This document shows positions 1,669 to 61,610 of a DNA stretch of 64,000 bases, piece by piece; positions within the stretch are counted from its first letter, which is position 1; every line of letters starts with the position of its first letter. The notes under the pieces are model-generated. The model did not search any database, had not been told where the DNA came from, and worked only from the letters and a program-made list of their open reading frames with translations. A program made the position numbers and the translations under genes. Source of the stretch: Macrostomum lignano (Eukaryota); the NCBI GenBank assembly GCA_002269645.1, contig NIVC01000916.1, positions 1 through 64,000 of the forward strand, read 5' to 3'.

Positions 1669-4178
1669 AAGTAATTTACAACGAAAAATCTGCATTTTTG
1701 TACTTTAGAATTACGAGGTTTAGCCGGTCCTAATTCTTCTCAAGGGTAGGTGACATTGCAGGGTGATTCTTTCTGTATTTTACGTGTACAATGAGTTTAC
1801 TTTCATGTACGTTTATGGAAGTATTTAAACTTAAGATTATGAAGTAGTTCAATAAGTGGTACTTCATTTATACATGTACAGAGTGTACTTTTATTTTACG
1901 CATATACGTATGTTGTACACGTAATATGTATTGCTACTCCAAAAGTCGTAAATGTTGTCCACGCCGTAAAATAAAATAACTAACCATTTATTCTTCCTTA
2001 GCAAGGGCTTGTTGCCACTCTCAAGGACGACTTAAGTATCGTAATTCTCTTTTTAAACAATCGTTTGGTCACACTCTATACACATGTATGTTTTGGTTGT
2101 AGTGGCCACTAAACTTTTTTTTGTAGTAAAGGCCATGTGCATGGTAAAAAAATCAAGGACCACTTATATAGCTATATACAGTGGTCCTTGAAAAAATAAC
2201 GAGAACGAGTGTACATGTGTAAGAACTTTTGTGGAATACGTATGTAGGGCATTTCAAACATTCTTTGACCCCGGCTTATTGTTAATGGATCTCCAAAGTC
2301 GATTTAAGGATGACTTAGATGACTAACCAGGGTAAACTTTAAGTAGCTTAGTATTTTCAATAACAATACAGTGAAAATTAATATAGGTCGAAATTAATAC
2401 AGTAATTTTGGAGTACTTTACGTCGCGACTGCAGTTCTAGAGCACAATAATTTTATGCGATAATAACTAAATTAATTGTATTTAATAGTAGGAATAATTA
2501 TGAAGATAAATAAATCGGCGCACTTTCCATCATCTTTAACCACCTGGAAGATTATTTATGCGGTAAAACAAATAGATTTTACTCTAACGTGCTTTAAAAT
2601 AAAATATAGTGTTAAAAGCTTACCGAAAGAAGGTGCTCTAATTTATTTTTCTAGCACATTATTTTTATTAGCTTAAGAGCAAAAAAATTTATACTGGGAC
2701 TGTACACAAAAATATGACTTTTCCAAAACCTTAGTTTTAGTTAGCGGAAAGTGAATTAAAAAGGGCCGACCAGAAAACTATTTATCTTAATATATAGACA
2801 GGCTAATTTTTTAAATTTCTCTTGTTCTGCTATACTCTTAAATTCTGTAGTTTTGCACTCTCGAAAAAGTATTAAACGATCATAATAGGTATACTTTTTG
2901 TTGGTTACATAAATGCTGGTTAGGATTGGTACTCAATCTGTGGCTCAATCTGTTAGTTAACCACTATCATAGGTGCTGGAGTGTTTATAAAAGTGGGGGT
3001 CAGGTACCATTAATATACCCCCCCCCACTTTTAGAAGGGGGCCATCCCCCCCCCCCCCCCCTTGGTCCCATCATTCTGACACCATGATCATTACTCATTT
3101 GTTATTATCAATTAATTACTGATCCAACAGATCTCAGATCCTGGATCTAACCTAATTGAATCCTTATTTTAATTACAAGCTCCCTTGTAAGATATAAAGG
3201 TAGCAAATACTTGAATGGTTTAAAAAATATGTAACAATTTAATTTAGGAAAATTTAAGAAAGTTTAAGTAAAAGACATCAAAATTTGCTAGAAAATTGTA
3301 GGGCCAAGTACTTTATACTTTGGATTGCCTCTCACTTTCAAAATGGGAACCTATCCTCTCAGCCCCCCTTTTTATGCCAATGGCCACTATTGTTTTCTCT
3401 TTTGTCAATAACTCCTTTTGTATACTACTCTTAAAAAATAATTTCTTATTTTATTCTATAAATCAATTTATCAAAATCAATCACAATTAAGTAACAATTA
3501 CAAACAAATTACAAACAAATTAAAACTTGCAATAATCATCAGCAAAGTCTAAACAAGTTTTTTTATTTCTATACAAAATACAGTTTATTCTCATTAAAAA
3601 AAGTATAGCAACTTCTATATGCTTAAAAAAATTTTTTATTAATTTTACTTTTTTACTCTTTCTTACTTTAAATTTTTCATTATTCTCTTGTCAGTAACTA
3701 TTGTTACTGTTTACTAAGCCTACACAGAGATTGATATGATTAGTTGTTTTTTGCCTACTATGTATAGTATTTGGCTTATTATAATTAATAATACTATTAA
3801 TAACACTTTATATACTTTATACTTTGGATTTTGTATACTATCAATTCACAAATTAATATAAGTTCTTACAAATTTAATTACAATAAAAAATAGTCTTCAA
3901 AGTCATTTAGCAGTAGGCAAATATATTGATGCCCCTTACAAAATTTTAGTACATTTGTGTTTGCTATTTGTAAGGTTAGTGTTAATTTTCAGTCCCACCT
4001 TTTCAGTACTAAATCAAATAGATATTTTTGGCTTGATAATTTTGTTTTGAAGCTCTTAAAATTCATTCGCGCTACTAATAGTAATTCATGAGTTTGTGAA
4101 TTTAATATTGTTTTAAAATTTATTAATAAACAATCTGTAGATTTCTTGACTCTTCATCCCACGTTCCAGTCTTCCAAG

Positions 4179-4573
4179 ATGTCCGCTGTAGGCAAGTCAG
4201 GCGCCGCCAGATCTGTCCCGGTGCCGCGTGCTGCCCGCGCCTCGCGCCCCCAGCCGCAGCCGCCGCGCCAGTCACAAAATTGGACGGCCCGCTGCACCAT
4301 GTGAAATTCGAAATCCACGGCAAAGTGCAGGGCGTCTTCTTTCGCAAGCACACTGAGCGGGAGGCGCGCCGGCTTGGTCTGGTCGGCTACGTGCTCAACA
4401 CGGAGCACGGAACGGTGCTCGGCGAGGCTTGCGGGCCCGCGCCGCATCTGGAGGAGTTCAAGCGCTGGCTGAGAACCAAAGGCAGCCCTAAGAGCCGCAT
4501 TGACAAGGCCGTGTTCACGGATGAGGGCCCCAGCACCGACTGCCCCTTTGCCGATTTCACCATTAGCAAATGA
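4179..4573 (+). CDS. ACYP: acylphosphatase, single exon, start out of frame by one indel
   Basis: 4280-4573 reads FEIHGKVQGVFFRKHTEREARRLGLVGYVLNTEHGTVLGE...WLRTKGSPKSRIDKA, with the G.VQGV.FR catalytic loop and the GSP.S.I motif. No in-frame ATG exists back to the stop at 4127. The nearest ATG (4179) is 101 nt upstream. Confidence 0.9.
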
Positions 4574-5198: not shown

Positions 5199-6486
5199 TC
5201 ACTGGGTGACCTTGAGAAACTCTGTAATTTCAAAATAAGTTCACACAGATGTTCACCTACAATTTTTTTTGCTTTGTCAGATTTCTACCTCAGTTAACGC
5301 CCACCACCTATCTACACCAAACCCCATTCCAATCGGCACCCACCTCACGCCATACCGCGTCCCTCCATTTCTACCCCAATCGACACCCACCTCACGCCAT
5401 ACCGCGTCCCTCCATTCCTACCCAATCGACACCCACCTCACGCCGTGTCCCTCCATTCCTACCCCAATCGACACCCACCTCACGCCATACCCCGTCCCTC
5501 CATTTCTACTCCAACCGACACTCACTATATACGTCACGGGCTAAACCAACATTGACCAACTCAAATAGACACAATTGCATCAAACTTCACCCGGACAAGT
5601 TTCACCTTTCTTAGTCCCCTTAAACTTGATTTTTAAAGAGCTGCAATACTAGAAGTTTTATTTCTCACCCTCCCAACTGATCTTTCCCGTATTGTCCGCA
5701 TCCACAACCGACAGCATCTGTTTGAGCTCTTCCGTCGATAGCTTCATCCCTGCTTTGGCGAATTCGGCGCGCAGTTGGTACTGAAAGCAAGGTAAAAATG
5801 ATGAGCTGGGTGGCTGCAATCTCTGTGGAAGCAAAGCAGTTTAAATTGGGCATCCCTACATGCGTTAGGAAGCCGGTCTTTTTGATGTCCATGGCTTGAA
5901 ATGCGTCTCGCAACAGCTGATTGAAGTCAGCTGATCTCGACTGCATGTAGCTGATGAAGTCATCCTCCGTTATCATGCCGGATCCTGAAATGCGCAGATA
6001 TACAGATAGCAATAATTAGATTAACCATCTTCTGAAACTTCAGATGATTACGCGACGCCAGTATGTACGCGGTTGGAGGTGGCATTTTCATCTACAAGGA
6101 CCACTAGAAGTTCCCTTTCTACCAGGACGTAGGACTCGCGTTTTTTGGACATTTTATCTGAAGGCTCAATTTCGCTTGCGATGCGAACACATTAGCGAGA
6201 TGGCTAACCTATATTTTGAGCATGTCGTGTTAGCATGCAATCCGTTACTTTCTCATAAAGCTACGTAGCATGTGCTGGTTCCGAGATGGCTTATTTAATT
6301 AATAAGAGACAGACAGAAACAGATCCAGTTACCTTTGGTATCTGCCTGGCCAACAATATTCCTAGCATCAGCCTCCGTGACGTCCTCGCCGATTCTCTTC
6401 ATCACCTGGCAGAGCTCCTGCACGGTGATGCCGCCTCTGCCGGTCTTGTCGATGGCGCGGAACACTTTTCGCACCTCTGGCCGCAT
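5199..6486 (-). CDS. calmodulin-like four-EF-hand protein, 137 aa, 4 exons
   Basis: Exons 6486-6333, 5984-5860, 5780-5669 and 5221-5199, all GT-AG and phase-compatible: MRPEVRKVFRAIDKTGRGGITVQEL...ADTKGSGMITEDDF...AFQAMDIKKTGFLTHYQLRAEF...LSVVDADNTGKISWEEFLKVTQ*. Confidence 0.9.
5300..5520 (+). repeat. ~47-bp minisatellite in last intron of the EF-hand gene
   Basis: 4-5 copies of CCCCAATCGACACCCACCTCACGCCATACCGCGTCCCTCCATTCCTA. Confidence 0.9.
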
Positions 6487-7814
6487 TGTCAGGTTATTGA
6501 GGATAATTGTTTTAATGAAATGAATGACGGAATTGGCATTGAAAAATGATTGAAAAGTTATTTCAAGAATTTTATTGAATGCACACGCGTAGCTGTCGAG
6601 TACGTGCGGTTTAAAAATTAAATAATTAAGCTTATCCAATGTCGCTTCTTGGTTGTACCTTGATAGAGAAACGTAAGCTTCTAAAGAACCATGACAGTGT
6701 AGTAGCAACCAACGGACTTTTCAGTCCAAGCCCTTATTGTACTTCACAGGAACACCAAATGGTTCTTCATCGGAACACCAAATGGTTCTTCATAGGAACT
6801 AGTCTTCAAAAGTGCACCTGACCGGTGCTCATAGAATAATCCGGTTCCTTGATGAAGTAGCTCGTACTACACTTACCATATGCACATATGGAATTTTTTA
6901 GACACACAATAAGATACGAAGTTAAACAAATTTCGTTCTGAACTTACGAGTCTCGTCAAAATGGCTATTGCCCGACATTTCCTGTAACTTGAAAAAAACT
7001 TCAGACTATGTACTACAGATACGCCAGATCTATTTGAAGTTGAGAACAGCATATTTATAGCATATATATATACATCGGTGTATGGACTCTGAGTTACAAA
7101 TTTATACAACGATTTTTGTCTATTTTTGTTGCAAAGAGTAGCTTATAGTATACTGAGTGCTCAAACTGAGTTTTGCGTAGCTTTGAGCACGCGCTGCAAC
7201 TGCAGGCTTCGTTGATTGCCACACCGCCAAGTCCTCAGACGAGGCCCATGAGCTGAAATTTGCATTTCGCGTGGCTTTACAAACGATGAGAGGCGCGCAG
7301 TGTAGAAAGCATTTGGAGCCCGAAGGTCACAGGGGTTGTCGCACAATGACTGTTTGCCTGTTATGACAGTTTGAGCACGATTGACACTTGAAAGGTACAA
7401 AATTAATTGCAAATGAAACTTGAGAGAGAAGCTGTCTCAACAGTCTCTGAGCTCAGTGTTACAGTGGTTCGACTGTGGTGCGATTCTCAACTCCCTTAAA
7501 TTGCAGGCAATTACGCTGTATTTCTGCAGTCGCTGTAATCATTCTTGAGCCTAATTATTTTTGCACCGCATTCTATCAACTGCAACTCAGAAAGCAGCTC
7601 ATGAATAAGAGCCATATTTCACTCGTGATAATGACTTCAAATAACAATAGTTTTAGAATGAAATGTTTGTTAAATTTGAAGCAAATCAACAGCAATCCAT
7701 GTACCATTCCTTCAGGATGCAGCATTAGCCGTTCGCGCTAAAAATGGAACTCATGTAGTACGATACATTTGGAAAAGACGAACGAAAATCTTTCAGTACA
7801 AAACAATTTTTGCT

Positions 7815-7942: not shown

Positions 7943-9888
7943 CAAAAAGACCATGCACGCAAGCTATAAAGCACGATCAAGATGAGTTATAGTTATTTTA
8001 TTGATCGAAAGCTACAGTTTGTTACAAGAATTTGGCTAGGGAGAAAATATACTGAAAGCGGCTCTAAATTTGGTCATTCTCGGCCTATGGCCCGCGCTTA
8101 CTGGCATCAGTCAGTCAGGCCAGGGAACACTGGAGTCTGGAGATTTAGCATGATGCATGCGGACAGCTTGGTCTCATCCCAGGGGCGTGGCAACCGGGGG
8201 GGGGCAAGGAGAATATCCCCCCCAATAAAAGCTATGAACCCGTGACCCGTTATGAAAATCCATAATTTAGTTTCAGGGCGCCAATAATATACATGCGCTC
8301 GTATATAGTACCTTCGGCGCCAAAATGGATGCCCTTGTGGTGCCAAATTGAGTGCCTGATGAAGCTGCGGCCCTCATAACGCTCATTAATTTCTGCAAAT
8401 GAACGAATGCTCCAGGATAATTACATGTATCAGCAAAAATGCAAACAGATTCGTCGCACACAAAAGTTTTCAATGACAAAGCCACCAACAAAGTAACAAA
8501 AATCAACGCAATCCAAAATGATCCCTTTAAAATACATGTACCGTATGGTATTGGCGTTTTATGATTCTTGTTTTAACATTTAGAAGAAATCATTTTATGG
8601 AAAACAAGCCTTCCACAAGTGGTAAAACATCAATATTAAAATCGTTTTTTTGCGCTCCCAAAACTGGCGAATACATTTGCAGACTCAAATCTATCCACGC
8701 ACCACATCCACAGATGTAGTTCACAAATTTACTTGTTCTGTTGAGCAGAACATTTCCCTTACATTAAAAAATGAAAACACACTTTTATACACTAAGGTTC
8801 TGTTGTCGGTTGTCATTGTCGTTGAAGATTGTCTACACAGGTCGGAGATTATTTGATGCAAGTACAAGAGTGAGCAAGGGCGAGCGAGCAAAGGGAGGAG
8901 AGAAGAAATTAGGCGCAGCTTCTTGCTTGGTTTGATAAGGGTTTGTTTATACGTCCTTTTCTCAGTCTTTCGCAAACGCAATCCTTAGCTTTTATTGGAG
9001 CATATCCATCAGTTGCTAATACATTCAAAGCTGGATAGAAACTTTAGGGCCGAAAATACATCACTTCATTACCGTGTCTGTCTGCTTGCGTTTGACAGAA
9101 GTAGCCGCAATGCCTGGGCGATCAATAATTGTTTTCAGTCTCCTATCAGTCATTTTTCGAAGGTCGAGGCCCAATGTGTGTCGCTAACAGCTGCAGTCGC
9201 TAATTGAGAAAGTTCGAACCAACAAGTAATAAAATAATTACAACAGGAATCTATTTCAGTCTGTGTGAGAGGTTCACGTATTCGCACTGCTTTAAATCTT
9301 TCCATCAACTGAGTTGCTACTAGGGTGAAATCCTATACTCAGTTGTTAACGCTGGCTGAAGAAGTCAAACAAACTCAAAGAGCCGGTTCTTGGCTATCGC
9401 GAGTTGCGAAAGGCATGTAGAAGATCATAGCCGACATTGGTTTTTAATCTAGCCCATCACCCTTAGTCCTGGCTTAAATTAATCACCTTGTGGGTTTATG
9501 GGTTAAAAATTCAGTATTGAGTTGGATTACACAAAACTGGATGAGAGTTGGACAACAACGATTTACCTTAATACTGAAAAACTTTCTAATTTTCTAAAGC
9601 GATTGTTCACGAGTATCATAAATCATTAATCTAAACTTTTTCCATCCAATCAGGACGCTATCAGCACGCCTCGTATATAATGGAAGAATTAGTGTCCTAG
9701 AAAAAATGAAAAAGAGACTTAAAAAACAGTAACATTAACTGTAGCGTCTCCTACAGATAGAATATTACGTGTTTTATTAAAAGAATAAAACCAAAACCAA
9801 ATTAGTGCCTCAAAAACAAGTTAGAGTTAAAACAGGTTGCGATTAGAAAATATTCATGGATTGCAGAACTTCACAAACTGCTACAAGC

Positions 9889-11691
9889 TTAGATACCCTT
9901 GGCGTTGCCTCCGATCCTGATCCGTCTCGACATGCTTTTGGCGTTGCCTCCGATCCTGATCCGTCTCGACATGCTCTTGGCGTTGCCTCCGATCCTGATC
10001 CTTCTAGACATGCTCTTGGCGTTGCCTCCGATCCTGATCCGTCTCGACATGCTCTTGGCGTTGCCTCCGATCCTGATCCGTCTCGACATGCTCTTGGCGT
10101 TGCCTCCGATCCTGATCCGTCTCGACATGCTCTTGGCGTTGCCTCCGATCCTGATCCGTCTCGACATGCTCTTGGCGTTGCCTCCGATCCTGATCCGTCT
10201 CGACATGCTCTTGGCGTTGCCTCCGATCCTGATCCTTCTAGACATGCTCTTGGCGTTGCCTCCGATCCTGATCCTTCTAGACATGCTCTTGGCGTTGCCT
10301 CCGATCCTGATCCGTCTCGACATGCTCTTGGCGTTGCCTCCGATCCTGATCCTTCTCGACATGCTCTTGGCGTTGCCTCCGATCCTGATCCTTCTAGACA
10401 TGCTCTTGGCGTTGCCTCCGATCCTGATCCGTCTCGACATGCTCTTGGCGTTGCCTCCGATCCTGATCCGTCTCGACATGCTCTTGGCGTTGCCTCCGAT
10501 CCTGATCCGTCTCGACATGCTCTTGGCGTTGCCTCCGATCCTGATCCGTCTCGACATGCTCTTGGCGTTGCCTCCGATCCTGATCCTTCTAGACATGCTC
10601 TTGGCGTTGCCTCCGATCCTGATCCTTCTAGACATGCTCTTGGCGTTGCCTCCGATCCTGATCCTTCTAGACATGCTCTTGGCGTTGCCTCCGATCCTGA
10701 TCCTTCTAGACATGCTCTTGGCGTTGCCTCCGATCCTGATCCTTCTAGACATGCTCTTGGCGTTGCCTCCGATCCTGATCCTTCTAGACATGCTCTTGGC
10801 GTTGCCTCCGATCCTGATCCGTCTCGACATGCTCTTGGCGTTGCCTCCGATCCTGATCCGTCTCGACATGCTCTTGGCGTTGCCTCCGATCCTGATCCTT
10901 CTCGACATGCTCTTGGCGTTGCCTCCGATCCTGATCCGTCTCGACATGCTCTTGGCGTTGCCTCCGATCCTGATCCGTCTCGACATGCTCTTGGCGTTGC
11001 CTCCGATCCTGATCCGTCTCGACATGCTCTTGGCGTTGCCTCCGATCCTGATCCGTCTCGACATGCTCTTGGCGTTGCCTCCGATCCTGATCCGTCTCGA
11101 CATGCTCTTGGCGTTGCCTCCGATCCTGATCCGTCTCGACATGCTCTTGGCGTTGCCTCCGATCCTGATCCTTCTAGACATGCTCTTGGCGTTGCCTCCG
11201 ATCCTGATCCTTCTAGACATGCTCTTGGCGTTGCCTCCGATCCTGATCCTTCTAGACATGCTCTTGGCGTTGCCTCCGATCCTGATCCTTCTAGACATGC
11301 TCTTGGCGTTGCCTCCGATCCTGATCCTTCTAGACATGCTCTTGGCGTTGCCTCCGATCCTGATCCGTCTCGACATGCTCTTGGCGTTGCCTCCGATCCT
11401 GATCCGTCTCGACATGCTCTTGGCGTTGCCTCCGATCCTGATCCTTCTAGACATGCTCTTGGCGTTGCCTCCGATCCTGATCCGTCTCGACATGCTCTTG
11501 GCGTTGCCTCCGATCCTGATCCTTCTAGACATGCTCTTGGCGTTGCCTCCGATCCTGATCCATCTAGATGGTGGATACCTGATTATTACCCTATTCGCAT
11601 TGCTGACTTCCTCGCAGTCGGCTGTAGTTGTAATGATGTAGCAGGCGAGGACGGCCAGTAAACAGCTTAGTATGGGCTGTCCGAGTACCAT
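9889..11691 (-). CDS. putative secreted multi-copy peptide precursor: signal peptide + 43 x IRIGGNAK linked by SMSRR, 600 aa
   Basis: ATG at 11691 starts MVLGQPILSCLLAVLACYIITTTADCEE (hydrophobic signal-like segment). The frame runs through the 39-bp array to a stop two codons after the last unit. Variant sites TCG/TCT, CGG/AGG and AAG/AAA are all synonymous. AATAAA on the minus strand at 9773-9778. Confidence 0.7.
   Translation of the reverse strand: MVLGQPILSCLLAVLACYIITTTADCEEVSNANRVIIRYPPSRWIRIGGNAKSMSRRIRIGGNAKSMSRRIRIGGNAKSMSRRIRIGGNAKSMSRRIRIGGNAKSMSRRIRIGGNAKSMSRRIRIGGNAKSMSRRIRIGGNAKSMSRRIRIGGNAKSMSRRIRIGGNAKSMSRRIRIGGNAKSMSRRIRIGGNAKSMSRRIRIGGNAKSMSRRIRIGGNAKSMSRRIRIGGNAKSMSRRIRIGGNAKSMSRRIRIGGNAKSMSRRIRIGGNAKSMSRRIRIGGNAKSMSRRIRIGGNAKSMSRRIRIGGNAKSMSRRIRIGGNAKSMSRRIRIGGNAKSMSRRIRIGGNAKSMSRRIRIGGNAKSMSRRIRIGGNAKSMSRRIRIGGNAKSMSRRIRIGGNAKSMSRRIRIGGNAKSMSRRIRIGGNAKSMSRRIRIGGNAKSMSRRIRIGGNAKSMSRRIRIGGNAKSMSRRIRIGGNAKSMSRRIRIGGNAKSMSRRIRIGGNAKSMSRRIRIGGNAKSMSRRIRIGGNAKSMSRRIRIGGNAKSMSRRIRIGGNAKSMSRRIRIGGNAKSMSRRIRIGGNAKSMSRRIRIGGNAKGI
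9898..11567 (+). repeat. 39-bp tandem array, ~43 copies, two main variants
   Basis: Unit CTTGGCGTTGCCTCCGATCCTGATCC(G/T)TCT(C/A)GACATGCT, with no indels across the array. Confidence 0.99.
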
Positions 11692-12808
11692 TGCAGAGTT
11701 GGAGAATGCGGTTGGAGATTTGCTGAGAGTGTAAAATGGCGATTTGTAGCTTAAGAGCTGGTTGCTTTTATAGTATTTAAACTCCAAAGAGAAATATTGT
11801 ATCACCTGCTGTTTAATGACGTCATAATAACTGACGCAGTAACAATTAGCGTGGTAATGAAAGATTTTTGACTCAGGTCTCAGCCAAAAATAGTCAATGC
11901 TATTGAGTGCAAACAGTTTTCGTCATTTAACTACATGTATATTGCGTAATTTTCAATGCTAGCTGGCGCAAAAGAAGCTGTTTTTTAGCGAGCACAAATC
12001 TTAGAGGCTTTGACAGAAATGAAATTTTGAAGATGAAAGACGAGTTTTGAATTTTGGGACTGTGACAGGCATCTTCTTCAGACTTCCAGATGTATGTGAG
12101 AACGTCAGCTCGAGTCCTGATAGATCCTTGAGGAGTTAGTAGTTAAAATTACACTACAATTCAGCAGCAAGGAGCACAGTTGACAACACCTCGAAATAAT
12201 CATATTTATTTGAAGGCCCAAGTCAGGTAGAAAATGCGCCAGGGAGATGCGAGCCTCGGATCTCGAAAGAGAAGGAGAACTCGAGAATGTGAGCCAATGC
12301 ATTTTGCAGAAATGGTGTCCCAATGACCACTGTCCTTGGTCCTTGAAATTGAAAATCAATTTCTAACCAAACGCAGCAGGTGACAAATATAAAATCCTTC
12401 AGCAGTGGTATTTTATGCGGTAATTAACTCGCACCACGTGTTTATTAATGTTTCCAGATTATTTAATAAGAGCTGATAAACAAGATTAAAATTGTTTGAA
12501 ATTGCTGATTGCAGGGCATTGAAAACCGACTAAAAAGTTTAGTGAGACCTGCTGTCAGCTGATCATTATAATTAAGGCAAAGCACACGTAGGGTTAAATC
12601 TATATTACTAAATCTGAATTTTTAACTATAATCAGAAGATATTCTGCGGATTAAATGTCATAAGTACCAAACAGACGGTGCATTTAAGGTTTAAATGCAG
12701 GCAGCTGTTCAGCTACGGGTACGGATTAGCGCTGCTGGGCCGCTGGGTTCGGGTTGCTGGGTGAGCAGTCTTGTTCTTGTTATTACTATTAGTAGGATTC
12801 GTTAGCGA

Positions 12809-25640: not shown

Positions 25641-26074
25641 TCGGGGTGATACAGAATGAGTCACTGAGGCACTGCTGAAATTATTCCAAGCACGATGCTG
25701 CACAAGCAAGCAACGCACCCAGTTAGCGGAAGCAAGCGAAAGCAGAAGTCAAGAAAGGAGAATAAAAGATGCGCGCAGCCCGCTGGCAATAAAAAGCAGA
25801 GATCGGTACTTTCGCAAAGCCCGATGACTCGCTCGCTCGGGCCCAGTTCGTGTCGAAACGAATTTTAAAACGCAAAATCGACAGGAAAGTGGAGACAATT
25901 TTGATACAACCGGTTCGAACTTCGTTAAGGCTGGCTCGCAACTTTTAATTCGAAGATAAAACTCTTTTCACTTTCGCTTGGTTGGAAAAGGATTTGCCCA
26001 ACTGCTTCTTTCCCTCAGTATCTTCGTTGGCTTTCTTCTTGATCTGCCTCCAGCTCGTAATATTCCTCCCTGTT

Positions 26075-29000
26075 TCATAATCTCCCTGATTCATAATCTC
26101 CTGTTTCTTAATCTCTCTGTTTCATAATCTCCCTGTTTCTTAATCCCTCTGTTTCATAATCTCCCTGTTTCTTAATCTCCTGTTTCATAATCTCCCTGTT
26201 TCACAATCTCCTGTTTCTTAATCTCTCTGTTTTATAATCTCCCTGTTTCACAATCTCCTGTTTCTTAATCTCCCTGTTTCATAATCTCCCTGTTTCTTAA
26301 TCTCTCTGTTGTATAATCCCCCTGCTTCATAATCTCCTGTTTCATAATCTCCCTGCTTCATAATCTCTCTGTTTTATAATCTCCCTGTTTCATAATCTCC
26401 TGTTTCATAATCTCCCTGTTTCATAATCTCACTGTTTCATAATCTCCCTGTTTCAGAATCTCCCTGTTTCATAATCTCCCTGTTTCACAATCTCCCTGTT
26501 TCACAATCTCCCTGTTTCACAATCTTCCTGTTTCATAATCTCCCTGTTTCATCATCTCCAGTTGTTTCATAATCTCCAGCTGTTTCATAATCTCCAGCTG
26601 TTTCATAATCTCCAGCTGTTTCATCATCTCCAGCTGTTTCATAATCTCCCTGTTTCATAATCTCCCTGTTTCATAATCTCCAGCTGTTTCATAATCTCCC
26701 TGTTTCATAATCTCCAGCTGTTTCATAATCTCCCTGTTTCATAATCTCCCTGTTTCTTAATCTCCTGTTTCATAATCTCCCTGTTTCATCATCTCCAGTT
26801 GTTTCATAATCTCCAGCTGTTTCATAATCTCCAGCTGTTTCATAATCTCCAGCTGTTTCATCATCTCCAGCTGTTTCATAATCTCCCTGTTTCATAATCT
26901 CCCTGTTTCATAATCTCCAGCTGTTTCATAATCTCCCTGTTTCATAATCTCCAGCTGTTTCATAATCTCCCTGTTTCATAATCTCCAGCTGTTTCATAAT
27001 CTCCAGCTGTTTCATAATCTCCCTGTTTCATAATCTCCCTGTTTCATAATCTCCCTTTTTCATAATCTCCCTGTTTCATAATCTCCCTGTTTCATAATCT
27101 CCAGCTGTTTCATAATCTCCCTGTTTCATAATCTCCCTGTTTCATAATCTCCCTGTTTCATAATCTCCCTGTTTCATAATCTCCCTGTTTCATAATCTCC
27201 CTGTTTCATAATCTCCCTGTTTCATAATCTCCAGCTGTTTCATAATCTCCCTGTTTCATAATCTCCAGCTGTTTCATAATCTCCAGCTGTTTCATAATCT
27301 CCCTGTTTCATAATCTCCCTGTTTCATAATCTCCCTGTTTCATAATCTCCCTGTTTCATAATCTCCAGCTGTTTCATAATCTCCCTGTTTCATAATCTCC
27401 AGCTGTTTCATCATCTCCAGCTGTTTCATAATCTCCTGTTTCATCATCTCCAGCTGTTTCATAATCTCCCTGTTTCATAATCTCCAGCTGTTTCATAATC
27501 TCCCTGTTTCATAATCTCCCTGTTTCATAATCTCCCTGTTTCATAATCTCCAGCTGTTTCATAATCTCCCTGTTTCATAATCTCCAGCTGTTTCATAATC
27601 TCCCTGTTTCATAATCTCCAGCTGTTTCATAATCTCCAGCTGTTTCATAATCTCCAGCTGTTTCATAATCTCCCTGTTTCATAATCTCCCTGTTTCATAA
27701 TCTCCAGCTGTTTCATAATCTCCAGCTGTTTCATAATCTCCCTGTTTCATAATCTCCCTGTTTCATAATCTCCCTGTTTCATAATCTCCAGCTGTTTCAT
27801 AATCTCCCTGTTTCATAATCTCCAGCTGTTTCATCATCTCCAGCTGTTTCATCATCTCCAGCTGTTTCATAATCTCCAGCTGTTTCATAATCTCCCTGTT
27901 TCATAATCTCCAGCTGTTTCATCATCTCCAGCTGTTTCATAATCTCCTGTTTCATCATCTCAGGCTGTTTCATAATCTCCCTGTTTCATAATCTCCAGCT
28001 GTTTCATAATCTCCCTGTTTCATAATCTCCCTGTTTCATAATCTCCCTGTTTCATAATCTCCAGCTGTTTCATAATCTCCCTGTTTCATAATCTCCCTGT
28101 TTCATAATCTCCCTGTTTCATAATCTCCCTGTTTCATAATCTCCCTGTTTCATAATCTCCCTGTTTCATAATCTCCCTGTTTCATAATCTCCAGCTGTTT
28201 CATAATCTCCCTGTTTCATAATCTCCAGCTGTTTCATAATCTCCAGCTGTTTCATAATCTCCCTGTTTCATAATCTCCCTGTTTCATAATCTCCCTGTTT
28301 CATAATCTCCCTGTTTCATAATCTCCAGCTGTTTCATAATCTCCCTGTTTCATAATCTCCAGCTGTTTCATCATCTCCAGCTGTTTCATAATCTCCTGTT
28401 TCATCATCTCCAGCTGTTTCATAATCTCCCTGTTTCATAATCTCCAGCTGTTTCATAATCTCCCTGTTTCATAATCTCCCTGTTTCATAATCTCCCTGTT
28501 TCATAATCTCCAGCTGTTTCATAATCTCCCTGTTTCATAATCTCCAGCTGTTTCATAATCTCCCTGTTTCATAATCTCCAGCTGTTTCATAATCTCCAGC
28601 TGTTTCATAATCTCCAGCTGTTTCATAATCTCCAGCTGTTTCATAATCTCCAGCTGTTTCATAATCTCCAGCTGTTTCATAATCTCCCTGTTTCATAATC
28701 TCCAGCTGTTTCATAATCTCCAGCTGTTTCATAATCTCCCTGTTTCATAATCTCCCTGTTTCATAATCTCCCTGTTTCATAATCTCCAGCTGTTTCATAA
28801 TCTCCAGCTGTTTCATAATCTCCCTGTATCATAATCTCCAGCTGTTTCATAATCTCCCTGTTTCATAATCTCCCTGTTTCATAATCTCCCTGTTTCTTAA
28901 TCTCCTGTTTCATAATCTCCCTGTTTCATAATCTCCCTGTTTCATAATCTCCAGCTGTTTCATAATCTCCAGCTGTTTCATAATCTCCAGCTGTTTCATA

Positions 29001-30455
29001 ATCTCCAGCTGTTTCATCATCTCCAGCTGTTTCATCATCTCCAGCTGTTTCATCATCTCCAGCTGTTTCAGAATCTTCCTGTTTCATAAACTCCCTGTTT
29101 CATAATCTCCAGCTGTTTCATAATCTCCAGCTTTTTCTTAATCTCCCTGTTTCATAAACTCCCTGTTTCATAAACTCCCTGTTTCATAAACTCCCTGTTT
29201 CATAAACTCCCTGTTTCATAAACTCCCTGTTTCATAATCTCCAGCTTTTTCTTAATCTCCCTGTTTCATAATCTCCAGCTTTTTCTTAATCTCCCTGTTT
29301 CATAAACTCCCTGTTTCATAAACTCCCTGTTTCATAATCTCCAGCTTTTTCTTAATCTCCCTGTTTCATAATCTCATGTTTCTTAATCTCCCTGTTTCAT
29401 AATCTCCTTGTTTCATAATCTCCCTGTTTCATAATCTCTGTTTCATAATCTCTGTTTCATAATCTCCCTGTTTCTTAATCTCCTGTTTCTTAATCTCCTG
29501 TTTCTTAATCTCCCTGTTTCATAATCTCCCTGTTTCATAATCTCCAGCTGTTTCATAATCTCCCTGTTTCATAATCTCCCTGTTTCATAATCTCCCTGTT
29601 TCATAATCTCCAGCTGTTTCATCATCTCCAGCTGTTTCATAATCTCCAGCTGTTTCTTAATCTCCCTGTTTCAGAATCTCCCTGTTTCCTAATCTCCGGT
29701 TTCTTAATCTCCCTGTTTCATCATCTCCCTGTTTCATAATCTCTCTGTTTCATAATCTCCCTGTTTCATAATCTCCCTGTTTCATAATCTCCCTGTTTCA
29801 TAATCTCCCTGTTTCATAATCTCCCTGTTTCATAATCTCCCTGTTTCATAATCTCCCTGTTTCATAATCTCCAGCTGTTTCATAATCTCCAGCTGTTTCA
29901 TAATCTCCCTGTTTCATAATCTCCCTGTTTCATAATCTCCCTGTTTCATAATCTCCCTGTTTCATAATCTCCAGCTGTTTCATAATCTCCCTGTTTCATA
30001 ATCTCCAGCTGTTTCATAATCTCCAGCTGTTTCATCATCTCCAGCTGTTTCATAATCTCCAGCTGTTTCTTAATCTCCCTGTTTCATAATCTCCTGTTTC
30101 ATAATCTCCCTGTTTCATAATCTCCTGTTTCATAATCTCCCTGTTTCATAATCTCCCTGTTTCATAATCTCCAGCTGTTTCATCATCTCCAGCTGTTTCA
30201 TCATCTTCAGCTGTTTCTTAATCTCCAGCTGTTTCTTAATCTTCCTGTTTCAGAATCTCCCTGTTTCTTAATCTCCCTGTTTCATAATCTCCCTGTTTCT
30301 TAATCTCCCTGTTTCATAATCTCCCTGCTTCACAATCTCCAGCTGTTTCATAATCTCCCCGTTTCATAATCTCCCTGCTTCATAATCTTCCTGTTTAATA
30401 ATCTCGCTGTTTCATATTTTCTCTTTTTCTTAATCTCCCTGTTTCATAATCTCCC
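26075..30455 (+). repeat. 4.4-kb 16/18-bp satellite with higher-order duplication
   Basis: Interspersed ATAATCTCCCTGTTTC (16 bp) and ATAATCTCCAGCTGTTTC (18 bp) units. Block ~27181-27670 recurs exactly 960 bp downstream. Confidence 0.99.
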
Positions 30456-31394
30456 TCTCTCTCTTTTACCTTAAGCTTTTATAACTTTACGAAAGTCCAG
30501 AACCATATAAACTGCTGAAAACTTGTGTTGTTTTGCTCAAGATTGACCCCGCTGCCCTGCAGCAACTGTACAACATAAAGACTACATTTAATAAGCGAGC
30601 TGTGGGAGTGAAATAGAGCCTCACAGTGCAGGGCAGGACTCAGCATCAGAGTAAGAACTAAAATCAGGGCTCCCCTTCGGGCTGCCTTTGTCAGCTTAGC
30701 GCGCATACGGCCTCGCACAGAGCTAGGAGGGCCGCACTTTCCACCTTGAGCTGAGAAGGCCCGCCTGTGTACCTACTAGAAACACTGCATGCGAGTGCAG
30801 ATGCGGCTTTCAAAGCTAGGATAGAAGCCTCGCGATTTCCTTGAGTTCCCCGCCCGCGTCTCCTCTTCCTTCTATCCACGCACCCGTCTGCAGTCTGCCT
30901 GTCTTTCTGTCTGCTTCTTCTTCTTCATAATCTTTCGCTCGTTTTGCGTCCGCAGCTTCTGCTTTGAGTCCCCGACAGCGTCCCGCTCTCGAGAGCAGCT
31001 TTCACAATTCCTTTCACAGCCATAAAACAGAAAGGAAGTTGTCCTCCCCTCCTTCAGGCCGTCATCCCTGCGCAACACACGAGATCTGCGGGGGAAAGGG
31101 AAAGCAGATGGGACGGCATCTCAGTCCATAATCTCTGCAGTGCGCTCGTAGCAAATTCGGCTTCAAATTCTCTCCGATCGCTCTGTGGTAACGAGACACC
31201 TGGCTGATTGACGAACTGCTCACTCGCCTCGATGCAGAAACCATGCAGCGCGTGATTAGAGACTAAAAAGAGGGAAATGCAGGTACCCGGAAATAAGTAC
31301 AATGTATACAGAACTCCCAAACTGTCTTGTCGTGTCACGTGTGCTTATGAGCATTGAACGCTGAGAATGCAAGCCGATCGTGTCAAAGTGGCAG

Positions 31395-42939: not shown

Positions 42940-43013
42940 TGGTCGGGGAGGGGCTCGAACCCTCGACCTTCGCGTTATCAGCACGACGCTCTAACCAACT
43001 GAGCTACACGACC
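42940..43013 (-). tRNA. trnI-GAU: tRNA-Ile, anticodon GAU
   Basis: Reverse complement GGTCGTG TA GCTC AGTTGGTTA GAGC G TCGTG CT-GAT-AA CGCGA AGGTC GAGGG TTCGAGC CCCTC CCCGACC A forms a full cloverleaf with one acceptor mismatch. A and B boxes are intact, a downstream T-run terminator is present and there is no encoded CCA. Anticodon at 42977-42979. Confidence 0.95.
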
Positions 43014-45423: not shown

Positions 45424-45608
45424 TCAGCCATTGCATGCACACAAGCCGCATCTCGCTACTCATAGTAGAGTCAGCCATTGCATGCACACAAGCCGCATCT
45501 CGCTACTCATAGTAGAGTCAGCCATTGCATGCACACAAGCCGCATCTCGCTACTCATAGTAGAGTCAGCCATTGCATGCACACAAGCCGCATCTCGCTAC
45601 TCATAGTA
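45424..45608 (+). repeat. 47-bp x4 tandem duplication including the Tctex1-domain gene stop codon
   Basis: Unit TCAGCCATTGCATGCACACAAGCCGCATCTCGCTACTCATAGTAGAG. Its reverse complement contains TAC TAT GAG TAG. Confidence 0.95.
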
Positions 45609-46286
45609 GAACCAATAGGCGGCGGCGGAGGCAACGAAGGTCGGCCGGTCCAGACTGGCCGTGGCGCAGCCATCGCAGCCGGCGTCCAGCAGGCAGCGCG
45701 AGGCCTCCAGGCCGCCCTGGCGGGCCTTCTGCACCAGGCCGGCGGTCACGACCAGTTTGAAGCGGCGCGAGCCGGTCAGCGCCAATTTCAGGCGCCGCTT
45801 GACATCCTCGGCGACCATGCGGATGAGCTTGGCGCTGGCCCGCTGGCAGTAGTGCGACTCGCCCAGGAAGAAGTGCAGACTGTGCCGCAGAACCTGGCCG
45901 GGCTCGCCGGGCGATGCGAAGGCTGGCGCGGCCGGCCGCGTCTGGTAGGAGTTGTCGCCGCGACCGGCGCCGCCCCGGCGACCATGCAGAGCCGCATTGG
46001 CCGCCGCCTGAGCCTGAAGGCGAGCGCGGACTTCACGCAGTCGACGCTTGAGCACGATGAGCATCGACAGGCTCAGCTGGCGAGCCGGCTGCTGCTGCTG
46101 ATGCTGGTGATGAGGCAGCTGCAGGTGATGCTGGCTGCTTGGCGTCTTTGACCCAGCTTCTTCTCTGCGGAAGTGGCTCTGCTGCTGATGATGATGCTGC
46201 TGGTGATGCTGGTGGTGCGGCGGCAGGCTGAGCTGCACCGACTGCGGCTGCTGACGGCGGCGCTTCTGGTCTCCTCCGGCTGGCAT
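45597..46286 (-). CDS. Tctex1-domain dynein light chain (TCTEX1D/DYNLT family) with long Gln/His-rich N-terminus, 229 aa
   Basis: The C-terminal ~110 aa VLRHSLHFFLGESHYCQRASAKLIRMVAEDVKRRLK...RFKLVVTAGLVQKARQGGLEASRCLLDAGCDGCATAS...AAAYWFYYE* matches the Tctex-1 pattern (RFKLVV, SRCL.D...D, final YYE). Confidence 0.88.
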   Translation of the reverse strand: MPAGGDQKRRRQQPQSVQLSLPPHHQHHQQHHHQQQSHFRREEAGSKTPSSQHHLQLPHHQHQQQQPARQLSLSMLIVLKRRLREVRARLQAQAAANAALHGRRGGAGRGDNSYQTRPAAPAFASPGEPGQVLRHSLHFFLGESHYCQRASAKLIRMVAEDVKRRLKLALTGSRRFKLVVTAGLVQKARQGGLEASRCLLDAGCDGCATASLDRPTFVASAAAYWFYYE

Positions 46287-58449: not shown

Positions 58450-59432
58450 ATGAGTTTGCGTAGGATGACTGTAAATTAGCTACGTGAAGAATTGAGAGAT
58501 AGGGGCCTGAGCACGCACGGCTACAAGAAAGACCTGGTCAGTAGACTCTCCACTGCGATGAGCCAGAGCGAAGCAGCTAGTCGTCGGGAACAAGTGGCAT
58601 CAAACTCCGCGGAGACCGACAGCGAAGGGCGGCGGCAGCAGCAGCGACAACGGCTGGAGGCAGGGGAGGCGCTGGACCTAGCAGAGCTCCAGCGGAAGAT
58701 AGCTAGTAGCCTGCAATCGGAGACGGCAGCAATGCGCCAGCAGCTGGAAGGCCAATTTAGACCAGGTGAGGTGGACCATCAGCTTTTTAATGAGCCCTCT
58801 GATTGTAGTAGCGACATGAATATCCCGAGTATGCTCAGAGGTCCCGGGTTCGAGCCCTCAGTAACTCAACCAGGGCTACGGGCGGCACCACTCGTCGTTG
58901 CGGATTTCTGCGGTTGTGACCCTCGGACGGCGTCGACGAGTTGTAGGGAAAAGGTGCTGCATGCAACCGCCAATCAGCCTAAACCTGAATCGCTGGGAAT
59001 CGGTCAGTGGATAGTCGGCAACGCGCGCATCCTCGACGCCCTGATCTCTAGGGGACAGCTCGACCTGGAAGGCGTTCGGCAGTACTTGCAGTACAACGTG
59101 CAGATCGGTGAGCTGGTCGAGGCAGGTTACGACACCACCAGGATCATGCGGTTCGACGACGCATTCAGAAGAGAGCAGCAGGCGGGCATGCAAGACTGGG
59201 CGCGACCGAGTTTCTCGCTGGTGACACGGCACCTCATCGCCCCGTAGCAGACTCCACAACATGCCCGTTCTCGCCTGGACAGGAAGATTCCGGTGATTCA
59301 AGGAGCGCCCGTCTGCATTAAGCTCAACACCGTGGTGGCTGCAAGTTCCAGAATTGCAAGCACACTCATGCGTGCCGGGTCTGCTTGCGCTTGGACCACG
59401 GCGAGACGCAACACGCGGCAAAAAACGAATAG
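58450..59432 (+). pseudogene. retrotransposon Gag-like ORF1 with SAP domain and Cys/His finger
   Basis: MSLRRMTVN*LREELRDRGLSTHGYKKDLVSRL matches the SAP consensus L...V..L...L..RGL...G.K..LV.RL. TAGs at 58477 and 59245, frameshift near 59330. Confidence 0.75.
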
Positions 59433-61035: not shown

Positions 61036-61144
61036 GATTTAGCTGCTGAATCCTGCTGCATCTCGCGCCACGCGCTCTGCCCTGCCTCCGTCTCCCTTTT
61101 ACTTTTGCAGGTCCGGTACCTCCTGCCTCCCGCCTACCCGCGGG

Positions 61145-61610
61145 CTGCTCCTTCGCTTCCTCGCCGACGCCTGGGCTCCTAGTACGAGGGCGTCGTACGC
61201 TTCAAACCTCGAACAGTGGTAGCGCTTCTGCGACCTCGAGGGTGTTCAGCCACTAGCGGCATCCCCGGTGCACCTGGTCGAGTACGTGCGACGCCTGGCT
61301 AAGCGCGGCGTGGCACCTGGTAGCCTCGGTGGACACCTGGCGGCCATCAGCTGGAGCTTCAAGCTGGCGCAACTCCCCGACATCACCAAGTCCGGCCTGA
61401 TCGATCTGGCAGTTAAGAGCGCCAAACGGACAAGCAGCCATTCAGTCAAGCAGAAAGACCCCATCACCCCGACGGTTCCGCTTTCACTAGCAAAACAGAT
61501 GAAGTCCCTGCAGACGCCGCCTTTTGGGCTGCTGTGCTCTGCTGCTTCTGGGCGCTTCTCAGGAAAGCAAATGTCTGCGGGCGCCACTCCACTCAGCCGT
61601 TCCGCTGAGG
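61145..61610 (+). pseudogene. tyrosine recombinase, N-terminal half
   Basis: FLADAWAPSTRASYASNLEQW*RFCDLEG...HLAAISWSFKL...KDPIT, then in a shifted frame AFWAAVLCCFWALLRKAN (first catalytic Arg). The sequence switches to AT-rich DNA after ~61610. Confidence 0.8.

What the first reader, a model, noticed from the sequence alone, without database searches (positions are those of the whole stretch)
9889..11691. Candidate new secreted polypeptide precursor: signal peptide + 43 cationic 13-aa units with dibasic RR sites
Seen in sequence: an ATG-initiated hydrophobic leader (MVLGQPILSCLLAVLACYIITTTA) in frame with 43 IRIGGNAK units joined by 42 SMSRR linkers, a stop 2 codons after the last unit, AATAAA about 110 nt downstream, no indels over 1.67 kb, and three variant sites that are all synonymous. 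The other arrays in this window mostly carry indels or length variants. Established: signal peptide plus tandem copies split by RR/KR is the architecture of prohormone-convertase/Kex2-processed precursors (neuropeptides, apidaecin-type antimicrobial peptides, fungal KEP/dikaritin RiPP precursors). Inference: cleavage at RR would release about 42 copies of IRIGGNAKSMS. There is no Gly-basic amidation signal and no acidic residue (+4 per unit), so it does not fit typical amidated flatworm neuropeptides. It may be an antimicrobial, mucus/rhabdite, adhesive or reproductive secretion. I do not recognise the peptide.
Basis: partly seen in the sequence, partly recalled or inferred. Interest (0 to 1): 0.85.

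Follow-up and report, generated by a model that had tools for sequence, protein, structure and literature searches.

The report
Unannotated flatworm gene for cationic repeat protein
A stretch of the flatworm Macrostomum lignano genome that looks like one more DNA minisatellite is most likely a real, unannotated gene for a secreted, very positively charged protein made of 43 (72 in a second genomic copy) identical 13-residue units, but its expression and function are unproven.

Summary
The minus strand carries ATG 11691 to TAA 9889: a 24-aa hydrophobic leader, a 20-aa unique segment, then 43 IRIGGNAK units joined by 42 SMSRR linkers.

The window is Macrostomum lignano contig NIVC01000916.1. An open frame and absence of indels prove little here: 38% of the window is minisatellite, three of six frames stay open, and many arrays lack indels.

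The evidence for a gene is comparative. A second genomic copy (L004) keeps the ATG, leader, stop position, TATA box and AATAAA, with 72 units and no frameshift. Seven of 10 unit variant sites are synonymous in this frame only (P=0.0025), and all common variants are silent. Flank indels are not multiples of 3; the only indel in the unique coding part (the leader) is 3 nt.

I put the gene at about 0.8 real. No transcript evidence could be obtained, and NCBI annotates nothing here.

Cleavage at RR into about 42 peptides is possible but untested. There is no acidic spacer, no amidation signal and no full furin motif, and AlphaFold2 stacks the repeats as a beta-solenoid. I slightly favour an intact secreted polycation.

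The only relative is a chimeric UniParc model of the same locus. Moderately interesting orphan gene.

The parts
11869..11875 (-). AP-1/TRE-like TGAGTCA about 100 nt upstream of the TATA box
   Evidence: locates it and shows such sites are common in the window (17 found, 12 expected). It is identical in L004. Weak, post hoc evidence.
11817..11824 (.). Perfect CRE palindrome TGACGTCA, 45-52 nt upstream of the TATA box
   Evidence: It is the only occurrence in the 64-kb window (0.68 expected in the whole window). L004 has TGACGCCA, so only the half-site is kept. Suggestive and post hoc.
11765..11772 (-). TATA box TATAAAAG, starting 81 nt upstream of the ATG (inferred transcription start near 11740)
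   Evidence: The proximal 100 nt upstream of the ATG are 96/99 identical between the window and L004.
11692..11742 (-). Inferred 5' UTR. It has no upstream ATG and the Kozak context is gcaATGg. A possible splice or trans-splice acceptor (ttttacactctcAG) lies at about 11722, where the UniParc gene model joins an upstream exon.
   Evidence: Sequence. P0120 joins at ...F|SKSPTAFSNSAM. The transcription start and the acceptor are inferred, not shown.
11620..11691 (-). Start codon and 24-codon signal-peptide-like leader MVLGQPILSCLLAVLACYIITTTA (h-region ILSCLLAVLACYII, c-region TTTA, Ala at -1, Thr at -3, Asp at +1)
   Evidence: It has the highest 14-residue hydropathy (2.81) of the 104 ATG-ORFs in the window. 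In L004 it reads MVLRQPAMLSCFLAVIACYIITTTA: 4 nonsynonymous and 3 synonymous changes plus one 3-nt indel, with hydrophobicity kept. SignalP was not available.
11560..11619 (-). Unique 20-codon segment DCEEVSNANRVIIRYPPSRW. It holds the only acidic residues and the only Cys of the mature protein.
   Evidence: 60/60 nt are identical between the window and L004, while the flanks differ by 5.2-5.5%.
9898..11559 (-). Coding minisatellite: 42 full 39-nt units (IRIGGNAKSMSRR) plus a final 24-nt IRIGGNAK
   Evidence: L004 has 72 units with no indel. Seven of 10 pooled variant sites are synonymous in this frame only.
9889..9897 (-). C-terminal Gly-Ile and stop codon TAA
   Evidence: L004 has GGC ATC TGA at the same position: one synonymous change and one stop-to-stop change.
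9773..9778 (-). Polyadenylation signal AATAAA in a 3' UTR conserved in all three genomic copies
   Evidence: In L003 a LINE is inserted between the stop and this signal.

Best explanation
This is a real, single-exon, lineage-restricted Macrostomum lignano gene whose repeat array is a coding minisatellite. I put the reality of the gene at about 0.8.

Inferred gene structure: a TATA-type promoter drives a roughly 2-kb minus-strand mRNA running from about 11740 to just beyond the AATAAA at 9773-9778.

Inferred fate of the protein: the hydrophobic leader takes it into the ER and is removed after TTTA. What remains is a 576-residue product (953 residues from the second genomic copy) with 173 Lys+Arg, 3 Asp+Glu and one Cys.

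Committed mechanism (inference, about 0.4): the product works mainly as an intact or only partly trimmed secreted polycation. In this reading Ile-x-Ile and Ala/Ser/Met face inward, Gly-Gly-Asn forms the turn, and the four basic side chains of each 13-residue unit form a regular cationic surface. That surface would bind polyanions such as sulfated or acidic glycans in mucus, adhesive or gland secretions, or microbial surfaces. Copy number sets valency. Unequal exchange changes copy number freely (43 versus 72 units), while selection removes units that change the peptide.

Shown: the ORF, its conservation, and the synonymous bias. Inferred: transcription, secretion, fold, binding partner and tissue.
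For: Identity of the sequence:
- The window is M. lignano NIVC01000916.1:1-64000.

Conservation in the second genomic copy, L004 (NIVC01000337.1):
- It keeps the ATG (19328), the leader, the 20-aa segment, the same stop position (TGA in place of TAA), the TATA box and AATAAA. It has 72 units and no frameshift over 2.9 kb.
- Flanks differ by 19/348 and 20/388 nt, with six indels of 4, 1, 1, 1, 1 and 2 nt. The only indel in the unique coding part is 3 nt, and the array difference is a whole number of units.

Synonymous bias in the units:
- Pooled interior unit variants are 7 synonymous and 3 nonsynonymous in the IRIGGNAKSMSRR frame, where 24% synonymous is expected (P=0.0025). No other frame is enriched; the best is P=0.14.
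- A non-coding 48-bp control array with 29 variant sites shows no bias in any frame.
- The variants that spread through an array are all silent: CGG in 23/42 window units, GGA in 16/71 and TCT in 25/71 L004 units. Amino-acid variants stay at 1-3 copies.
- The two arrays turned over independently. The window's main unit is absent from L004 and L004's GGA type is absent from the window, yet they encode the same peptide.

Other support:
- The leader ranks 1st of 104 ATG-ORFs for N-terminal hydrophobicity.
- The acidic stretch after the leader fits an N-in/C-out orientation (read from the sequence).
- Promoter elements.
- AlphaFold2 without an alignment gives mean pLDDT 80 (82-92 over the repeats) as a stack of short strands every 13 residues. 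The antisense-frame control repeat gives 53. Foldseek returns only beta-helix/solenoid proteins.
- Secreted G/R/K-rich polycations are an established component of flatworm temporary adhesion, and are released by polyanions (PMC9229212).
Against: - There is no transcript, peptide or in situ evidence.
- NCBI's annotation of this contig calls no gene here. That annotation also misses the obvious EF-hand gene at 5665-6708, so it is sparse.
- The protein database search found nothing at E<=0.01.
- The only relative is a chimeric UniParc model of the same locus, whose array shows frame switches. These are probably long-read errors, but that is not proven.
- The synonymous test rests on only 10 sites.
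- AlphaFold2 tends to stack any perfect repeat; the control also gave strands. The five models ranged from 50 to 80, and no Foldseek hit was significant.
- Stacking four like charges per 13 residues is unfavourable without counter-ions.
- One RR per unit is exactly what a convertase substrate would look like.
Confidence: 0.4

Rival explanations
1. One reading: a polyprotein precursor. After signal-peptide removal, a PC2/Kex2-type convertase cuts after each RR and a carboxypeptidase trims the arginines. This would release about 42 copies (71 from the second genomic copy) of IRIGGNAKSMS as a non-amidated neuropeptide or hormone, or as a host-defence peptide.
For: - There is one invariant dibasic RR per unit in a Ser-rich context, and the unit has the size of a peptide plus its processing site.
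- Purifying selection acts on the whole unit.
- The signal peptide is present.
- The TATA box with a CRE palindrome upstream is the layout of many regulated peptide genes. This rests plus my own knowledge and is post hoc.
- Tandem-repeat peptide 'protein operons' are known: apidaecin, Baramicin and D. neotestacea Drosocin (PMC8423362).
Against: - M-S-R-R is not the RX[K/R]R furin motif that Baramicin uses. Only R-R-I-R fits the minimal RXXR pattern.
- Ile follows both candidate cut sites. From memory of the convertase literature, beta-branched P1' residues are disfavoured.
- The first unit is preceded by SRW, not by a basic pair.
- There is no acidic pro-piece to neutralise about +170 charge, and no Gly-basic amidation signal.
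- The freed 11-mer has only +2 charge and low hydrophobicity (GRAVY -0.15), which is poor for a membrane-active peptide.
- Two L004 units have RI in place of RR.
- 98% identical units and a 43 versus 72 copy difference are more typical of structural repeat proteins than of neuropeptide genes (my own knowledge).
- The AlphaFold2 fold prediction.
Confidence: 0.3
2. Not a gene. This would be one more neutral minisatellite in a genome full of them, whose unit happens to lack stops in three frames and which happens to lie beside an ATG and a hydrophobic stretch.
For: - 38 arrays cover 38% of the window, and periods divisible by 3 occur at the chance rate.
- Three frames are open in the window and two are open full-length in L004.
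- Many arrays lack indels.
- There is no annotation and no transcript evidence.
- Copy number is unconstrained (43 versus 72).
- A third genomic copy (L003) carries a LINE insertion 37 nt 3' of the stop.
Against: - Synonymous bias is confined to one frame (P=0.0025; about 0.015 after correcting for six frames), and a control array shows none.
- The ATG and the stop position are kept, with a stop-to-stop substitution.
- The only unique-region coding indel is 3 nt, against six flank indels that are not multiples of 3.
- The leader ranks 1st of 104.
- The TATA box, Kozak context and AATAAA are conserved at the right distances.
Confidence: 0.18
3. The coding strand is the plus strand: either the 601-aa ATG-ORF 9856-11661 encoding (GVASDPDPSRHAL)n, or the ALPPILIRLDMLL frame.
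For: Both frames are open in the window. The first also has an ATG and stays open in L004 (988 aa).
Against: - Unit variants are 2 synonymous to 8 nonsynonymous and 5 to 5 in these frames, which shows no constraint.
- The ALPPILI frame is not open full-length in L004.
- There is no leader, no promoter-like element and no poly(A) signal in that orientation.
- AlphaFold2 confidence is low (53).
- An antisense frame in codon register stays open as a by-product of sense codons that lack TTA, CTA and TCA.
Confidence: 0.02
4. The ORF is an internal exon of a larger gene, as in UniParc model UPI0007A11E81. That model fuses upstream sequence, this array and the downstream EF-hand gene.
For: P0120 (1137 aa) contains the leader and array preceded by 188 residues and followed by the EF-hand protein encoded at 5665-6708 on the same strand.
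Against: - The model reads through the in-frame stop and changes frame repeatedly inside the array.
- The in-frame sequence upstream of the ATG is not conserved: L004 has a 1-nt deletion and a stop there.
- A conserved stop, AATAAA and 3.2 kb separate the array from the EF-hand exons.
Confidence: 0.03

Closest known systems
Tandem-repeat antimicrobial polyprotein precursors: honeybee/bumblebee apidaecin, Drosophila Baramicin A (PMC8423362)
   Same: A signal peptide is followed by head-to-tail copies of one short peptide, each copy ending in basic residues. Copy number amplifies output from a single gene and varies between copies or alleles.
   Different: - Those precursors use RXRR furin sites or RR plus acidic dipeptidyl spacers (EAEP). 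Here P4 is Met and there are no acidic residues at all.
- They have 3 to about 12 copies, against 43-72 here.
- Their cleavage is shown by mass spectrometry. Here it is untested.
- There is no sequence similarity.
Multi-copy neuropeptide precursors (for example the FMRFamide and cnidarian Antho-RFamide type; my own knowledge)
   Same: A leader is followed by many identical short peptides separated by basic residues. The promoter has a TATA box plus a CRE-like element.
   Different: - There is no C-terminal Gly for amidation.
- Nucleotide-level identity of the units is 98%.
- There is a large copy-number difference between genomic copies.
- The first copy lacks an N-terminal processing site.
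- No related peptide appears in the literature searched.
Flatworm adhesive polycations: the G/R/K-rich flanks of Mlig-ap1, and the separate ap3 protein of Minona and Theama (PMC9229212)
   Same: These are secreted flatworm proteins (Tmed-ap3 has a signal peptide) dominated by a long, strongly basic, Gly-containing low-complexity repeat. They are poorly assembled from short reads. Their proposed action is multivalent charge binding, reversed by a polyanion.
   Different: - ap3 is about 88% G/R/K/H/S with about 52% K+R and a loose motif. Here K+R is 31%, with a strict 13-residue unit that also contains Ile, Asn, Ala and Met.
- Homology was not tested because no ap1 or ap3 sequence was at hand.
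- The tissue of expression is unknown.
Beta-solenoid / beta-helix repeat proteins (for example the Ag43 and TibA passenger domains, tailspikes)
   Same: The AlphaFold2 model is a regular stack of short strands with a Gly-Gly-Asn turn. The only Foldseek neighbours are beta-helices (7kob, TM-score 0.48).
   Different: - No Foldseek hit is significant.
- A 13-residue unit is shorter than their rungs of 19-25 residues.
- The predicted surface is entirely cationic.
- The prediction comes from a single sequence and is prone to repeat artefacts (control).

Membership tests
Convertase-processed multi-copy peptide precursor | N-terminal cleavable signal peptide | tested here: met
   Heuristic only. There is a 14-residue h-region, a TTTA c-region with Ala at -1 and Thr at -3, and the top hydropathy of 104 ORFs. 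It is conserved as hydrophobic in L004. SignalP was not run.
Convertase-processed multi-copy peptide precursor | Each peptide copy is bounded on both sides by basic processing sites | tested here: inconclusive
   There are 42 internal RR sites. However, the first copy is preceded by SRW, the last ends in GI-stop, two L004 units have RI, and the P1' residue is Ile.
Convertase-processed multi-copy peptide precursor | Mature peptides demonstrably released | not testable with these tools
   This needs peptidomics. No paper or supplement searched holds the peptide.
Amidated flatworm/invertebrate neuropeptide precursor | Gly immediately before the basic site (amidation donor) | tested here: not met
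   The unit ends ...K-S-M-S-R-R. The Gly-Gly is followed by Asn-Ala-Lys.
Furin-type AMP polyprotein (Baramicin-like) | RX[K/R]R motif between repeats | tested here: not met
   The linker reads M-S-R-R. Only R-R-I-R fits the minimal RXXR pattern.
Apidaecin-type AMP polyprotein | Acidic spacer or pro-piece between cationic peptides | tested here: not met
   The mature protein has 3 Asp+Glu, all in the N-terminal DCEE segment.
Flatworm adhesive GRK-repeat protein (ap1 flanks / ap3) | Composition dominated by Gly, Arg and Lys (His, Ser) | tested here: inconclusive
   G+R+K+S make up 8 of the 13 unit residues and K+R 31%. Tmed-ap3 has about 88% and about 52%.
Flatworm adhesive GRK-repeat protein (ap1 flanks / ap3) | Expression in adhesive gland cells; sequence homology to ap1 or ap3 | not tested
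Neutral non-coding minisatellite | Unit variation shows no regard for any reading frame | tested here: not met
   There are 7 synonymous to 3 nonsynonymous sites in one frame only (P=0.0025), and the control array is unbiased.
Beta-solenoid repeat protein | A confident, regular stacked-strand fold resembling solved solenoids | tested here: inconclusive
   pLDDT is 80 (range 50-80 across the five models), against 53 for the antisense control. The best Foldseek hit has E=0.028 and TM-scores are at most 0.48.

The most novel reading that the evidence does not exclude
The repeat is a new kind of self-stacking cationic beta-solenoid: a secreted rod whose length is set by minisatellite copy number (43-72 rungs or half-rungs), presenting a periodic Arg/Lys ladder that binds polyanions reversibly. 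It could be an unrecognised component of the flatworm attach-release or mucus system. Alternatively, it could be the highest-copy bioactive-peptide polyprotein yet seen in a bilaterian.
Probability: 0.15. Interest if true: 0.7.

Novelty: new member of a known kind. Interest (0 to 1): 0.42.

Why it matters
- If transcribed, this is an orphan secretory gene that current M. lignano annotation misses. Its sequence looks like the repeats that annotation pipelines mask, so repeat-rich flatworm genomes may hide more secreted repeat proteins.
- It is a clean natural example of a minisatellite evolving under protein-level purifying selection while its copy number drifts. Two genomic copies have 43 and 72 units that turned over independently yet encode the same 13-mer.
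- M. lignano is a model for temporary adhesion, reproduction and regeneration. A 63-105 kDa secreted polycation, or a 40-70-copy peptide, would be a testable candidate for adhesion and release, mucus, seminal fluid or surface defence.

Tried and rejected
- Exact look-up of the ORF in public assemblies: not on record.
- Word-indexed homology search of 5.8 billion proteins: nothing at E<=0.01.
- Full HMMER scan of 1.84 billion representatives: one true hit, P0120, a chimeric UniParc model of this same locus. The other 197 hits are low-complexity repeat proteins at 8-44% identity, rejected as compositional.
- Pfam: only a below-threshold PCF11 repeat hit, rejected.
- PDB sequence search: nothing.
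- Metagenome scan for relatives: none.
- Full-text search for the peptide, and the supplements of the M. lignano seminal-fluid screen: nothing.
- Literature searches for Macrostomum neuropeptides: no match. The minisatellite search returned only unrelated papers.
- Rfam and tRNA scans: only an unrelated tRNA-Ile.
- Third genomic copy (L003): homology stops 37 nt after the stop codon at a LINE insertion, and the fetched locus ends inside the LINE. Presence of the gene there could not be decided. I considered reaching the far side through the Cyt-b5 neighbour but dropped it, because the gene is multi-exon and exact-match look-up was not feasible.
- A pooled automatic unit analysis of the window plus L004 was mis-registered and is disregarded (last block). 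The hand-registered analysis is the one used.
- 'No indels' and 'open frame' as evidence of coding: rejected as uninformative in this genome.
Full report
**What is there**

On the minus strand, an ATG at 11691 opens a 600-codon frame that ends at TAA 9889-9891. It reads:
- MVLGQPILSCLLAVLACYIITTTA (the leader),
- DCEEVSNANRVIIRYPPSRW (a unique segment),
- 42 full IRIGGNAKSMSRR units,
- a final IRIGGNAK, then Gly-Ile and the stop.

Tandem Repeats Finder gives 9898-11565, period 39, 42.8 copies, 98% matches and no indels. The array has four unit types that differ at three sites (tcG/tcT, Cgg/Agg, aaG/aaA). All three are silent in this frame. AATAAA lies 111 nt past the stop.

**Where it comes from**

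A Tctex-1 ORF in the window is 99% identical to a Macrostomum lignano protein. An acylphosphatase ORF led to contig NIVC01000916.1 of assembly GCA_002269645.1, whose first 14,573 bases equal the window. NCBI's annotation calls no gene at the array. It also omits the evident EF-hand gene at 5665-6708, so its silence carries little weight.

**What does not count as evidence**

- The window holds 38 tandem arrays covering 38% of its length.
- Only 11 of the 38 periods are divisible by three, which is the chance rate.
- About a dozen arrays also have 0% indels.
- The 39-nt unit lacks stops in three of six frames, so 580-601-aa ORFs also exist on the plus strand.
- One plus-strand frame is in codon register with the minus frame. 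Two of the three window variants are silent there as well.

An open, indel-free frame is therefore expected by chance in this genome.

**What does count: comparison with other genomic copies**

The acylphosphatase cluster has two further members, on other contigs of the same assembly. These contigs are diverged copies of the region, either alleles or duplicates. From my own knowledge, this species carries a partly duplicated genome.

L004 (NIVC01000337.1) is collinear with the window and holds the same gene:
- ATG at 19328.
- Leader MVLRQPAMLSCFLAVIACYIITTTA.
- An identical 20-residue unique segment.
- 72 units with no indel over 2.9 kb.
- The same ...NAKGI end, followed by TGA instead of TAA.

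Divergence between the window and L004 is as follows.

| Region | Mismatches | Indels |
|---|---|---|
| 5' flank | 19/348 | 4, 1 and 1 nt |
| 3' flank | 20/388 | 1, 1 and 2 nt |
| Leader | 7/72 (4 replacements, all hydrophobic or adding an N-terminal Arg; 3 silent) | one 3-nt indel |
| 20-codon unique segment | 0/60 | none |
| Proximal promoter (100 nt) | 3/99 | 1 nt |

The TATA box and AATAAA are conserved. In-frame sequence upstream of the ATG is not conserved: L004 has a 1-nt deletion and a stop there. This fixes the ATG as the start.

**Unit variation**

Pooling the interior units of both arrays gives 10 variant sites. In the IRIGGNAKSMSRR frame 7 are synonymous and 3 are not, against an expected synonymous fraction of 0.24 (P=0.0025). 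No other frame is enriched; the best is 5 of 10, P=0.14. A 48-bp non-coding array in the window, with 29 variant sites, shows no bias in any frame.

The variants that spread within an array are all silent:
- CGG in 23 of 42 window units.
- GGA in 16 of 71 L004 units.
- TCT in 17 of 42 window units and 25 of 71 L004 units.

Amino-acid variants stay at one to three copies each (R to I twice, M to T three times, G to A once). The two arrays have turned over independently. The window's main unit type is absent from L004 and the reverse also holds, yet the peptide is the same. This is the signature of a coding minisatellite under purifying selection with free copy number.

**Gene signals**

- The leader is the most hydrophobic N-terminus of the 104 ATG-ORFs of at least 60 aa in the window. 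It has Ala at -1 and Thr at -3 and is followed by an acidic stretch.
- TATAAAAG lies at 11765-11772, starting 81 nt upstream of the ATG. No upstream ATG intervenes, and the Kozak context is gcaATGg.
- The only perfect CRE palindrome in the 64 kb lies 45-52 nt upstream of the TATA box. L004 keeps only the half-site.

The promoter observations are post hoc and carry modest weight.

**Third genomic copy**

In L003 (NIVC01001238.1), homology to the window stops at window position 9852, 37 nt past the stop codon. A non-LTR retrotransposon is inserted there, with a 1236-aa endonuclease, reverse transcriptase and RNase H ORF and a tail of 18-nt repeats. The fetched locus ends inside the element. Whether the gene body persists in that copy is unknown. 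At the least, its 3' UTR is disrupted.

**Relatives elsewhere**

There are none:
- The word-indexed protein search found nothing at E<=0.01.
- The exhaustive scan found one true hit, UniParc UPI0007A11E81. This is a 1137-aa chimeric model of this same locus. It fuses upstream sequence, the leader and about 40 units with repeated frame switches, and the downstream EF-hand gene. The switches back and forth look like long-read indel errors, which is an inference.
- Pfam, the PDB, a metagenome scan and the literature gave nothing.

**What the product is like**

After leader removal the protein has 576 residues (953 from L004), with 173 Lys+Arg, 3 Asp+Glu and one Cys.

AlphaFold2 without an alignment models residues 45-285 as a regular stack of short strands every 13 residues. 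Mean pLDDT is 80, and 82-92 over the repeats. The five models range from 50 to 80. A same-length control from the antisense frame also gives strands, but at pLDDT 53. Foldseek finds only beta-helix and solenoid proteins, none significantly. This is a lead, not a result.

**How it most likely works**

I rate the gene about 0.8 real and, if real, very likely secretory. Two mechanisms compete.

1. Several points count against it:
   - The RR is not in an RX[K/R]R context.
   - Ile follows either candidate cut.
   - The first unit lacks an upstream basic site.
   - There is no acidic spacer and no amidation Gly.
   - The freed 11-mer would be only +2 and not hydrophobic.
   - Near-identical units with a 43 versus 72 copy difference are more typical of structural repeat proteins.
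2. I therefore slightly favour an intact or partly trimmed secreted polycation that binds polyanions multivalently (0.4, against 0.3 for full processing). Flatworm temporary adhesion already uses secreted G/R/K-rich polycations that a polyanion releases (PMC9229212). Composition here is only partly similar, and neither homology nor tissue was tested.

The chance-minisatellite reading keeps about 0.18.

**Verdict**

This is a new member of a known kind: a secreted tandem-repeat protein or polyprotein encoded by a coding minisatellite. It is of moderate interest, and expression evidence is the missing piece.

Noticed in passing
window 1-64000: The minisatellite density is extreme. 38 distinct tandem arrays (periods 2-48) cover 38% of the window, including a 4.4-kb 16-mer array at 26066-30456 and (ACAG)171 at 102-782.
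   Followed up: partly
L003 15745-20405; window 52689-53313: A full-length-looking LINE is inserted in the 3' UTR of the gene copy on NIVC01001238.1. It has a 1236-aa EN-RT-RNase H ORF and a tail of 18-nt repeats (CCCCAGATAGCAAGCATC). TRF reports the same 18-nt consensus for an array in the window, so some minisatellites here may be LINE tails.
   Followed up: partly
window 5665-6708 (minus): A multi-exon EF-hand (calmodulin-like) gene has clear Pfam hits but is absent from the NCBI gene calls for this contig. The annotation is sparse here.
   Followed up: partly
window 6742-6799 vs L004 12533-13142; window 5329-5525 vs L003 11071-11467: Non-coding arrays differ greatly in copy number between the genomic copies. 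A 23/24-nt array has 2.5 versus 25.5 copies, and a 47-nt array has 4.3 versus 8.3 copies.
   Followed up: no
window 58400-61700: A retroelement remnant or copy lies here. It has a reverse-transcriptase ORF (59696-60547, Pfam RVT_1) and flanking ORFs, possibly DIRS-like.
   Followed up: no
window 42940-43013 (minus): A tRNA-Ile (GAT) gene lies next to a 2.1-kb 23-mer array.
   Followed up: no
window 45597-46286 (minus); 48723-50691 (minus); 4172-4573 (plus); 14025 onward (plus): The ordinary neighbouring genes are a Tctex-1 family protein, a DUF498/NDUFAF3-like gene (two exons seen), an acylphosphatase and a cytochrome b5. The same order is seen on the other contigs (L002, L003, L004).
   Followed up: partly
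window 9856-11661 (plus): The antisense frame in codon register with the gene is open in both genomic copies (601 aa and 988 aa) and starts with ATG in the window. It shows no synonymous bias. It illustrates how repeat ORFs can mislead gene finders.
   Followed up: yes
P0120 (UniParc UPI0007A11E81): A public protein model merges this ORF, with frame switches, with the unrelated EF-hand gene and with antisense acylphosphatase sequence. This looks like an annotation artefact of an earlier assembly.
   Followed up: partly
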